From: Ylistrum balloti
Taxonomy: Eukaryota
DNA length: 64,000 nucleotides
Reading direction: 5' to 3'
NCBI RefSeq assembly: GCF_031769215.1
Contig: NW_026782111.1
Coordinates: forward strand, 310,001 to 374,000
Below, one piece after another: positions 11,988 to 12,438 of this stretch. The notes under the pieces are model-generated. The model was not told the origin of the DNA. It searched no databases and was given only the letters and a program-made list of their open reading frames with translations. The number at the start of each line of letters is the position of its first letter. Position 1 is the stretch's first letter. Both the position numbers and the translations under genes were made by a program.

Positions 11988-12438
11988 TAGCATCACTTGA
12001 CGAGTCCAAGAAGGACGAAACAGATGTATGATGCAGCATTACTGACGTGTCTTAGAAGGACGAAACATATGTATGATGTAGCATCACTGACGACTCCTAG
12101 AAGGACGAAACAGCTGTATGATGCAGCATCACTGACGCATCCAAGAAGGACGAAACAGATGTATGATATAGCATTACTGACGAGTCCAAGAAGGACGAAA
12201 CAGCTGTATGATGCAGCATCACTGACGCATCCAAGAAGGACGGAACAGATGTATGATATAGCATTACTGACGAGTCCAAGAAGGACGAAACAGATGCATG
12301 ATGCAGCATCACTGACGAGTCCAAGAAGGACAAAACAGATGTATGATGCAGCATCACTGACGAGTCCAAGAAGGACGAAACAGCTGTATGATGCAGCATC
12401 TCTGACGAGTCCTAGAAGGACGAAACAGCTGTATGATG
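11988..12438 (+). ncRNA. Tandem array of 10 x 45-nt minimal type I hammerhead ribozyme units
   Basis: Unit CAGCATCA-CTGACGA-GTCC-AAGAA-GGAC-GAA-ACAGCTGT-A-TGATG: stem I GCATCA/TGATGC, core CUGANGA and GAAA, stem II GTCC/GGAC, palindromic stem III, GUA triplet. Units 12169-12213 and 12349-12393 are intact; most others carry core or stem mutations. Confidence 0.9.

What the first reader, a model, noticed from the sequence alone, without database searches (positions are those of the whole stretch)
11988..12438. Minisatellite made entirely of minimal hammerhead ribozymes (10 x 45 nt, no spacer)
Seen: each 45-bp unit contains stem I (GCATCA/TGATGC), CTGACGA, stem II GTCC-AAGAA-GGAC, GAAA, self-complementary stem III ACAGCTGT and a GTA triplet. 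Units 12169-12213 and 12349-12393 are intact, with predicted cuts after A12208 and A12388. One unit has ACATATGT, which restores the stem III palindrome. Established: minimal type I hammerheads with a very short palindromic stem III occur in Penelope-like elements and metazoan non-LTR retrozymes, and cleave best as dimers. Those retrozyme monomers are usually a few hundred nt. Inference: here the repeat unit is the bare ribozyme, so neighbours supply dimer partners in cis and any transcript would be cut into 45-nt multiples. I do not know of a described ribozyme-only satellite.
Basis: partly seen in the sequence, partly recalled or inferred. Interest (0 to 1): 0.9.

Follow-up and report, generated by a model that had tools for sequence, protein, structure and literature searches.

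The report
Hammerhead-ribozyme minisatellite inside a decayed retrozyme
This 450-base stretch really is ten back-to-back copies of a 45-base self-cutting RNA motif. It is one decaying copy of a repeat found thousands of times in this bivalve genome, grown from the single ribozyme of a small mobile element. Nothing here shows that it is transcribed or cuts.

Summary
Window 11989-12440 holds 10 head-to-tail 45-bp units with no spacer, and each is a type I hammerhead (Rfam RF00163 reaches its gathering score at 12351-12394).

The array is not a stand-alone element. It sits at the ribozyme position of an old, dispersed, non-coding element of about 400 nt, made of a body, one hammerhead and a tail. 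That element has over 3,000 first-look candidate places in the genome and occurs in partial tandems, so it looks like a retrozyme. Most sampled copies carry one hammerhead; a minority carry arrays of 4 to more than 70 units.

Genome-wide there are 7,171 exact T-type and 473 C-type unit junctions. Variation is flat across core, stems and loops. 90-bp duplications show growth at the DNA level. Two adjacent units are predicted to fold as a double hammerhead, and unit junctions elsewhere pass the Rfam type III threshold.

No RNA data were available, so cleavage and expression are untested. One point is unexplained: arrays look 2-3 times younger than their host copies, yet share one junction and an ancestral consensus.

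This scan has already reported the same satellite at several other places in this genome. I found no published description of a 45-bp hammerhead-only repeat.

The parts
11989..12440 (+). Array 1: 10 head-to-tail hammerhead units (unit 1 is 46 nt, the rest 45 nt). In ribozyme register the units start at 11990, 12036, 12081, 12126, 12171, 12216, 12261, 12306, 12351 and 12396.
   Evidence: TRF; Rfam; unit table. Units 4 and 6 differ by 1 nt and units 5 and 7 by 2 nt, which indicates a 90-bp DNA duplication.
12171..12215 (+). Intact hammerhead unit 5; predicted cut after A12208.
   Evidence: Core, helix I, helix II and palindrome all intact; Rfam 32.1 bits.
12351..12395 (+). Intact hammerhead unit 9; predicted cut after A12388.
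   Evidence: Rfam 34.8 bits, at or above the gathering score.
12441..12522 (+). Tail of the host element (a diverged copy of the conserved ~85-100-nt 3' segment).
   Evidence: Alignment with the flank of array 2; BLAST to single-ribozyme element copies, reaching 12522; shared by many loci.
11940..11988 (+). Strongly decayed 3' end of the host element's body (weak match; only ...CCCTT next to the array is clear).
   Evidence: identity 29/39 to the body consensus.
38353..39149 (+). Second copy of the same arrangement: body end, 16-unit array (38366-39084, more decayed, 90-bp higher-order repeat), then tail.
46802..47047 (-). Host-element copy with a single hammerhead (46893-46937).
   Evidence: BLAST; unit scan.
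28498..28651 (-). Host-element fragment with a single hammerhead (28509-28553).
44525..44694 (+). Host-element fragment with a single decayed hammerhead (44552-44596) and tail.
3011..3282 (-). Host-element fragment with a single decayed hammerhead (3020-3064).
17219..17293 (-). Host-element fragment with a single hammerhead (17246-17290).

Best explanation
The array is a minisatellite derived from a transposable element.

The genome carries thousands of old copies of a non-coding element of about 400 nt. Each copy has a body of about 270 nt, one canonical type I hammerhead, and a tail of about 85 nt. The copies have a fixed 3' end, variable 5' ends and partial tandems, so the element looks like a metazoan non-LTR retrozyme or a non-autonomous Penelope-like element.

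In a minority of copies a 45-bp segment has been multiplied in tandem. That segment runs from the last base of the body through almost the whole ribozyme. The window's array 1 is one such expansion. It grew and was reshuffled as DNA, by unequal exchange or replication slippage, and 90-bp duplications are the trace of this. It is now decaying neutrally, with 2 of 10 units intact.

Inferred, not shown: if the array were transcribed, adjacent units would fold into double (type III-like) hammerheads and cut after the GUA of the few sites that still have an intact partner core.
For: - Both flanks of the arrays are conserved among loci and match the flanks of single-ribozyme copies.
- Of 29 loci found with the body alone, about 16 have exactly one hammerhead and 5 have arrays.
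- Tail sequence recurs directly upstream of the body, and tandem dimers have a ribozyme-to-ribozyme spacing of 364-397 nt.
- Single copies have C at unit position 44. Internal array units have T, which is the base that precedes the ribozyme in the parent. The last unit often keeps C. Genome-wide counts are 7,171 T-junctions and 473 C-junctions.
- Array 1 contains a 90-bp duplication.
- In 758 monomers the variation is flat: about 3.6% at core positions and 4.1% at free positions. 63% of cores are intact, and there is almost no compensatory change.
- An independent DNA run holds the same consensus bases.
- Folding and Rfam support the hammerhead readings.
Against: - Arrays look younger than their host copies. 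Interior monomers are 3-5% from consensus, while the two tail copies of the same insertion differ by 17-28%.
- The nearest genome-wide relatives of array-bearing flanks are only 75-87% identical.
- Even so, array consensus sequences are ancestral (0-2 changes), and more than 30 loci share one junction.
- Plain in-situ slippage of an already decayed local ribozyme does not predict these features. Exchange between loci, reseeding through RNA, or assembly polishing may be involved.
- The autonomous partner and target-site duplications were not examined.
- No RNA evidence was available in either direction.
Confidence: 0.72

Rival explanations
1. RNA-driven propagation. Array transcripts self-cleave into 45-nt (or multimer) RNAs. 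These are circularised and copied by rolling-circle reverse transcription. The multimeric cDNA then converts resident single ribozymes into arrays by homology.
For: Arrays appear younger than their flanks. They start from an intact-looking ancestral monomer, share one junction type, and share no multi-unit variant strings between contigs, so divergence within each array looks star-like. The double-hammerhead fold is the predicted minimum for two units. Retrozymes are reported to circularise (PMC7229834).
Against: Core positions are no more conserved than free positions. 90-bp and 180-bp higher-order repeats point to DNA-level duplication. The shared junction lies at the ribozyme's outer edge, not at the cleavage and ligation site. 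No RNA data exist. Circles of 45 nt are far below any described retrozyme size.
Confidence: 0.12
2. The arrays belong to Helitron/Helentron-type non-autonomous carriers of central tandem repeats, as described for oysters, and the ribozyme similarity is incidental to how they spread.
For: Bivalve satellites are often short arrays carried between conserved left and right flanks of mobile elements (PMC7492417, PMC8268682). Here too the arrays have conserved flanks on both sides.
Against: The repeat unit is the element's own single-copy ribozyme. Copies are circularly permuted partial tandems with a fixed 3' end and variable 5' ends, which fits copying from a tandem or circular template. None of the 52 published C. 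gigas satellite consensus sequences contains the hammerhead core.
Confidence: 0.06
3. The array is a host-used RNA-processing device, for example one that trims a host transcript or produces small RNAs.
For: The fold is plausible, and the arrays are abundant.
Against: Only 2 of 10 units are intact. Variation is neutral-looking and flat. The repeat occurs at thousands of scattered loci inside decayed mobile elements.
Confidence: 0.03

Closest known systems
Metazoan non-LTR retrozymes (for example the 350-390-bp repeats of the mussel Mytilus galloprovincialis; Cervera and de la Pena 2020, PMC7229834)
   Same: A canonical type I hammerhead sits in a non-coding, AT-rich repeat of a few hundred nt that occurs in tandem. 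It is found in a bivalve. The host element here has a 364-397-nt unit with one ribozyme.
   Different: The repeat under study has shrunk to the 45-nt ribozyme alone. It sits inside old element copies. Circular RNA and cleavage have not been shown for it.
Classical hammerhead satellites (newt satellite 2, Schistosoma Sm-alpha, cave-cricket pDo500), as cited in PMC4209133 and PMC7229834
   Same: Tandem DNA repeats in which every unit encodes a type I hammerhead that works best as a dimer.
   Different: Those units are about 330-500 bp with long non-ribozyme spacers. Here there is no spacer, so helix I of one site is closed by the neighbouring unit.
Minimal hammerheads of Penelope-like elements (Cervera and de la Pena 2014, PMC4209133)
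   Same: Dimer-dependent hammerheads linked to retroelements with partial-tandem structure. Tandem minimal copies are mentioned for axolotl Penelope-like elements (PMC7229834).
   Different: The minimal type lacks helix III and loop 3 and has a 7-8-bp helix II and a short helix I. This motif has a 4-bp helix II, a 6-bp helix I and a 2-bp helix III with a palindromic loop. No RT/GIY-YIG reading frame lies between repeats.
Satellite DNAs of oysters carried by mobile elements (PMC7492417, PMC8268682, PMC11136912)
   Same: Short arrays scattered over the genome, embedded between conserved flanks of a mobile element, with a satellite born from a transposon part.
   Different: Those carriers are Helitron/Helentron-related and their repeats are not ribozymes. 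The published 45-bp CgiSat36 is unrelated in sequence and absent from this genome.

Membership tests
Rfam RF00163 Hammerhead_1 (type I) | Covariance-model score at or above the curated gathering score (34 bits). | tested here: met
   34.8 bits at 12351-12394. 63 further type I hits at or above the gathering score in 20 other loci of the family. The other units of array 1 score 19-32 bits.
Hammerhead ribozyme (any type) | Conserved core CUGANGA...GAAA, the A15.1-U16.1 pair, H17 not G, and three helices. | tested here: met
   Met in full by 2 of 10 units of array 1. 63% of 758 family monomers have the core and 54% have core plus stems.
Hammerhead ribozyme (any type) | Site-specific self-cleavage in Mg2+. 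| not testable with these tools
No RNA run was available: the only run found is DNA contigs.
Rfam RF00008 Hammerhead_3 (type III), read across unit junctions | Score at or above 48.5 bits. | tested here: not met
   In this window the best junction hits score 29.4 and 29.2 bits. The threshold is met at nine junctions in other arrays (48.9-50.3 bits).
Canonical metazoan type I hammerhead (PMC4209133) | Helix I about 6 bp, helix II 4 bp, helix III 1-2 bp capped by a 2-4-nt palindromic loop. | tested here: met
   GCAUCA/UGAUGC (6 bp), GUCC/GGAC (4 bp), AC/GU closed by AGCU.
Penelope-like element minimal hammerhead (PMC4209133) | No helix III or loop 3, helix II 7-8 bp, helix I 4-5 bp, located in pseudo-LTRs flanking an RT/GIY-YIG reading frame. 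| tested here: not met
   The stem lengths differ. No long reading frame lies next to the arrays other than frames running through the repeats themselves. The parent unit is only 364-397 nt.
Non-LTR retrozyme (PMC7229834) | Type I hammerhead within non-coding tandem repeats of about 170-400 bp. | tested here: inconclusive
   The host element meets this at L032 (397 nt) and L040 (364 nt), and partial tandems are common. The 45-bp array itself lies far outside the size range.
Non-LTR retrozyme (PMC7229834) | Expressed as a highly self-paired circular RNA. | not testable with these tools
   No RNA data. Circular folds of two decayed units are no more stable than shuffled sequence (z -1.0 and +0.1), which says little for decayed copies.
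Satellite / minisatellite DNA | Head-to-tail arrays of one unit at many loci, with higher-order repeats and array-size variation. | tested here: met
   Arrays of 4 to more than 70 units on many contigs. 7,644 exact unit junctions genome-wide. 90-bp and 180-bp higher-order patterns.
Helitron/Helentron non-autonomous satellite carriers | 5'-TC and 3'-CTRR termini with a subterminal 3' hairpin. | not tested
   The ends were inspected by eye only. The element ends in ...TTGTACAATCT, with no obvious CTRR end.

The most novel reading that the evidence does not exclude
The 45-nt unit is a self-propagating 'minimal retrozyme'. Array transcripts cut themselves into 45-nt RNAs that circularise. These serve as rolling-circle templates for a Penelope-type reverse transcriptase, and the cDNA reseeds arrays at resident ribozyme copies. 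This would explain why arrays are younger than their host elements yet always start from an intact ancestral monomer with the same junction.
Probability: 0.1. Interest if true: 0.85.

Novelty: new variant of a known kind. Interest (0 to 1): 0.45.

Why it matters
Tandem repeats that carry hammerheads (newt, schistosome and cricket satellites, and animal retrozymes) are known only with units of a few hundred bases. Here the unit is the ribozyme alone, present on the order of 10,000 times or more. Each unit closes its neighbour's helix I and extends its helix III.

This gives a natural series of 1-, 2- and n-unit substrates for testing dimer-dependent hammerhead cleavage, and for finding the lower size limit of circles made by ribozymes. 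It is also a clean example of a satellite born from a defined functional part of a mobile element.

The mismatch in apparent age between arrays and their flanks, if it is real, bears on how dispersed satellites stay uniform across loci.

Tried and rejected
- RNA evidence. The look-up of sequencing runs returned a single run, which proved to be DNA contigs. Expression and cut sites therefore could not be tested.
Copy statistics therefore rest on 60 loci chosen by similarity, plus exact pattern counts.
- tRNA-like SINE head in the host element: no ARAGORN hit and no Rfam hit other than the hammerhead.
- Rod-like circular fold of the parent unit: not more stable than shuffled sequence in two decayed copies. 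The first script for this timed out.
- Array-bearing copies as a young subfamily: rejected. Flank tree and pairwise identities are the same for array and single copies, 65%.
- Compensatory evolution in stems: almost no double changes.
- Identity with the published 45-bp oyster satellite CgiSat36: rejected. The sequence is different and there is no match in this genome.
- I first suspected that the 36-bp satellite at 33481-36964 was related. That was a coordinate slip on my part: the weak hit lies at 28509-28553, inside another element copy.
- The autonomous Penelope-like partner was not searched for, because no further genomic DNA could be fetched.

Full report
**The observation**

Tandem Repeats Finder reports a 45-bp repeat at 11989-12438, with 10.0 copies, 88% matches and no indels. 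The sequence shows units with no spacer between them. Rfam's type I hammerhead model reaches its gathering score at 12351-12394 (34.8 bits against 34) and scores 32.1 bits at 12171-12214. Six further units score 19-29 bits.

I checked each unit in ribozyme register.
- Units 5 (12171-12215) and 9 (12351-12395) have every core base, a 6-bp helix I, a 4-bp helix II and the ACAGCTGT palindrome.
- Unit 2 carries ACATATGT, which keeps the palindrome.
- Unit 3 (G10.1 to C) and unit 10 (A2.1 to T) have intact cores but one broken stem pair.
- The other six units have a core substitution or an insertion.
- Units 4 and 6 differ by one base and units 5 and 7 by two. A 90-bp block was therefore duplicated as DNA.

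**What surrounds the array**

A second, more decayed array lies at 38366-39084, and the two arrays share their downstream flank. A search of the window's own genome (648.5 Mb, 1,372 contigs) found arrays on many contigs, some longer than 3 kb.

Across loci both flanks are conserved. Upstream lies a body of about 270 nt that ends in ...GGCCCTT. Downstream lies a tail of about 85 nt that ends in ...TTGTACAATCT.

A search with the body alone gave 3,360 first-look candidates, and the copies are only 70-80% identical. Of the 29 loci fetched this way, about 16 have exactly one hammerhead between body and tail, 5 have arrays of 4-21 units, and the rest are truncated or decayed.

The tail sequence also occurs directly upstream of the body in many copies. 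Tandem dimers have a ribozyme-to-ribozyme spacing of 397 nt (L032) and 364 nt (L040). The host is therefore a non-coding unit of about 400 nt, with a fixed 3' end, variable 5' ends and partial tandems. This is the layout described for animal non-LTR retrozymes and for Penelope-like elements (PMC7229834, PMC8557442, bioRxiv 10.64898/2026.07.22.740005).

The window itself holds about ten copies or fragments of this element. No tRNA-like head was detected.

**How the array arose**

Single copies read ...CCCTT-A-GCATCA...TGATG-C-A-GTTT. They have C at unit position 44 in 23 of 29 cases. Internal array units at more than 30 loci have T at that position, while the last unit often keeps C. The repeated segment therefore begins with the last T of the body and ends at G43.

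Exact genome-wide counts agree. There are 7,171 T-type junctions, 473 C-type junctions and 443 element 3' junctions, and the reversed-pattern controls give 0. The 25-nt core string occurs 3,918 times.

I corrected the junction count for the per-site variation seen. This suggests on the order of 20,000 monomers, roughly 0.1% of the assembly. This figure is my extrapolation, not a tool result.

An independent DNA run carries the family consensus bases at the positions where array 1 differs from it (for example T at 12394 and T at 12323). The consensus is therefore not an assembly artefact.

**Is the ribozyme under selection in the arrays?**

In 758 array monomers, 63% have an intact core and 54% also have all stems. 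From the counts, minor-allele frequency is about 3.6% at 13 essential positions and about 4.1% at 11 free positions (N7, loops and linker). These are much the same, given that the monomers are not independent. Double changes in stems are rare and show no compensatory pattern. The arrays look like neutrally drifting DNA.

**Folding**

- A lone 45-nt unit is predicted to misfold, with the CUG of the core paired to loop 3 (-14.9 kcal/mol).
- For two adjacent units the minimum-energy structure is the double hammerhead. It has an outer helix I, two helices II, an 8-bp helix III formed by the two palindromes, and an inner 5-bp helix I hairpin with a triloop. Its energy is -28.0 kcal/mol, against -14.6 for two separate monomer hammerhead folds. 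Window units 9-10 give the same fold at -26.5.
- Longer RNAs have competing folds of similar energy.
- In other arrays, nine unit junctions pass the Rfam type III gathering score (48.9-50.3 bits against 48.5).

In array 1, the plausible cut sites are after 12208 and 12388. Using the intact core of the next unit, cuts are also plausible after 12163 and 12343. This is inference. Cleavage itself is untested.

**An unexplained feature**

Array-bearing copies are not a subfamily. Their flanks are as diverged from each other as they are from single copies (65% pairwise), and they are scattered over the flank tree. The nearest genome-wide relatives of three array-bearing flanks are 75-87% identical.

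The upstream and downstream tail copies of the same insertion differ by 17-28% (L044, L019, L012), whereas interior monomers of those arrays are 4-5% from consensus. Array consensus sequences differ from the ancestral unit at only 0-2 positions. Arrays on different contigs share no multi-unit variant strings, apart from C943 and C515, which are probably one locus assembled twice.

Arrays thus look 2-3 times younger than their hosts, yet they begin from an ancestral-looking unit with one common junction. Simple in-situ slippage of a decayed local ribozyme does not predict this. Possible causes are gene conversion or circular-DNA exchange between arrays, reseeding through RNA, and repeat polishing in the assembly.

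The sample is small and partly chosen by similarity.

**Comparison with what is known**

The motif is the canonical metazoan type I hammerhead as described in PMC4209133. It is not the Penelope minimal type. The host element resembles the mussel retrozymes of 350-390 bp (PMC7229834).

Known hammerhead satellites and retrozymes have units of about 170-500 nt. I found no paper describing a 45-bp hammerhead-only repeat. None of the 52 published Pacific-oyster satellite consensus sequences contains the hammerhead core, and the 45-bp CgiSat36 is unrelated and absent here. The library searched is incomplete, and Dfam and Repbase could not be consulted.

**Earlier notes of this scan**

Several follow-up notes on other pieces of the same genome describe the same 45-bp hammerhead satellite and reach the same main reading. 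Those notes call the host a scallop; I did not verify the species. Relative to this scan the finding is therefore not new. Relative to the literature I could search, it appears undescribed.

**Verdict**

The array is real, and it is a tidy, compact variant of a known kind of repeat. It is decayed at this locus. There is no evidence of expression or cleavage. One population-level oddity is worth a proper census.

Noticed in passing
window 33481-36964: Large 36-bp repeat (108-bp higher-order unit, about 95 copies) with open reading frames of 175-370 aa on both strands. It may be a coding 12-residue repeat or a plain satellite. It is unrelated to the hammerhead unit.
   Followed up: partly
window 45576-46584: Very homogeneous 69-bp tandem array (11 copies, 98% identical). 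It lies between two oppositely oriented fragments of the hammerhead-bearing element (44525-44694 on + and 46802-47047 on -).
   Followed up: no
window 57-827 and 12919-13757: Two further tandem arrays: a 28/55-bp repeat at the window start, and an (AACC)n-based 26/56-bp repeat only 480 bp downstream of array 1.
   Followed up: no
G000:C4:355516-357006, C16:259330-259475, C19:1174706-1175810: The spacing of pattern hits shows variant periods of the same satellite: 53 bp, 42 bp and a 180-bp (four-unit) higher-order repeat. The sequences were not fetched.
   Followed up: no
L028 (upstream of the array at 1368), L003, L019: Some element copies or arrays abut (TC)n, (GA)n or (TA)n microsatellites. 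This recalls the microsatellite insertion bias reported for Penelope-like elements (PMC8557442).
   Followed up: no
L018/L022 (contig C943) and L023 (contig C515): These arrays share 14 three-unit variant strings. The two contigs probably represent the same locus twice, as a haplotig or a recent segmental duplication.
   Followed up: partly
family monomers, unit position 1: The commonest variant across contigs is G1 to A (10 contigs). With T44 it makes an A-U pair in the type I reading, and it gives the highest type III Rfam scores (50.3 bits). Its association with T44 is not independent of locus.
   Followed up: partly
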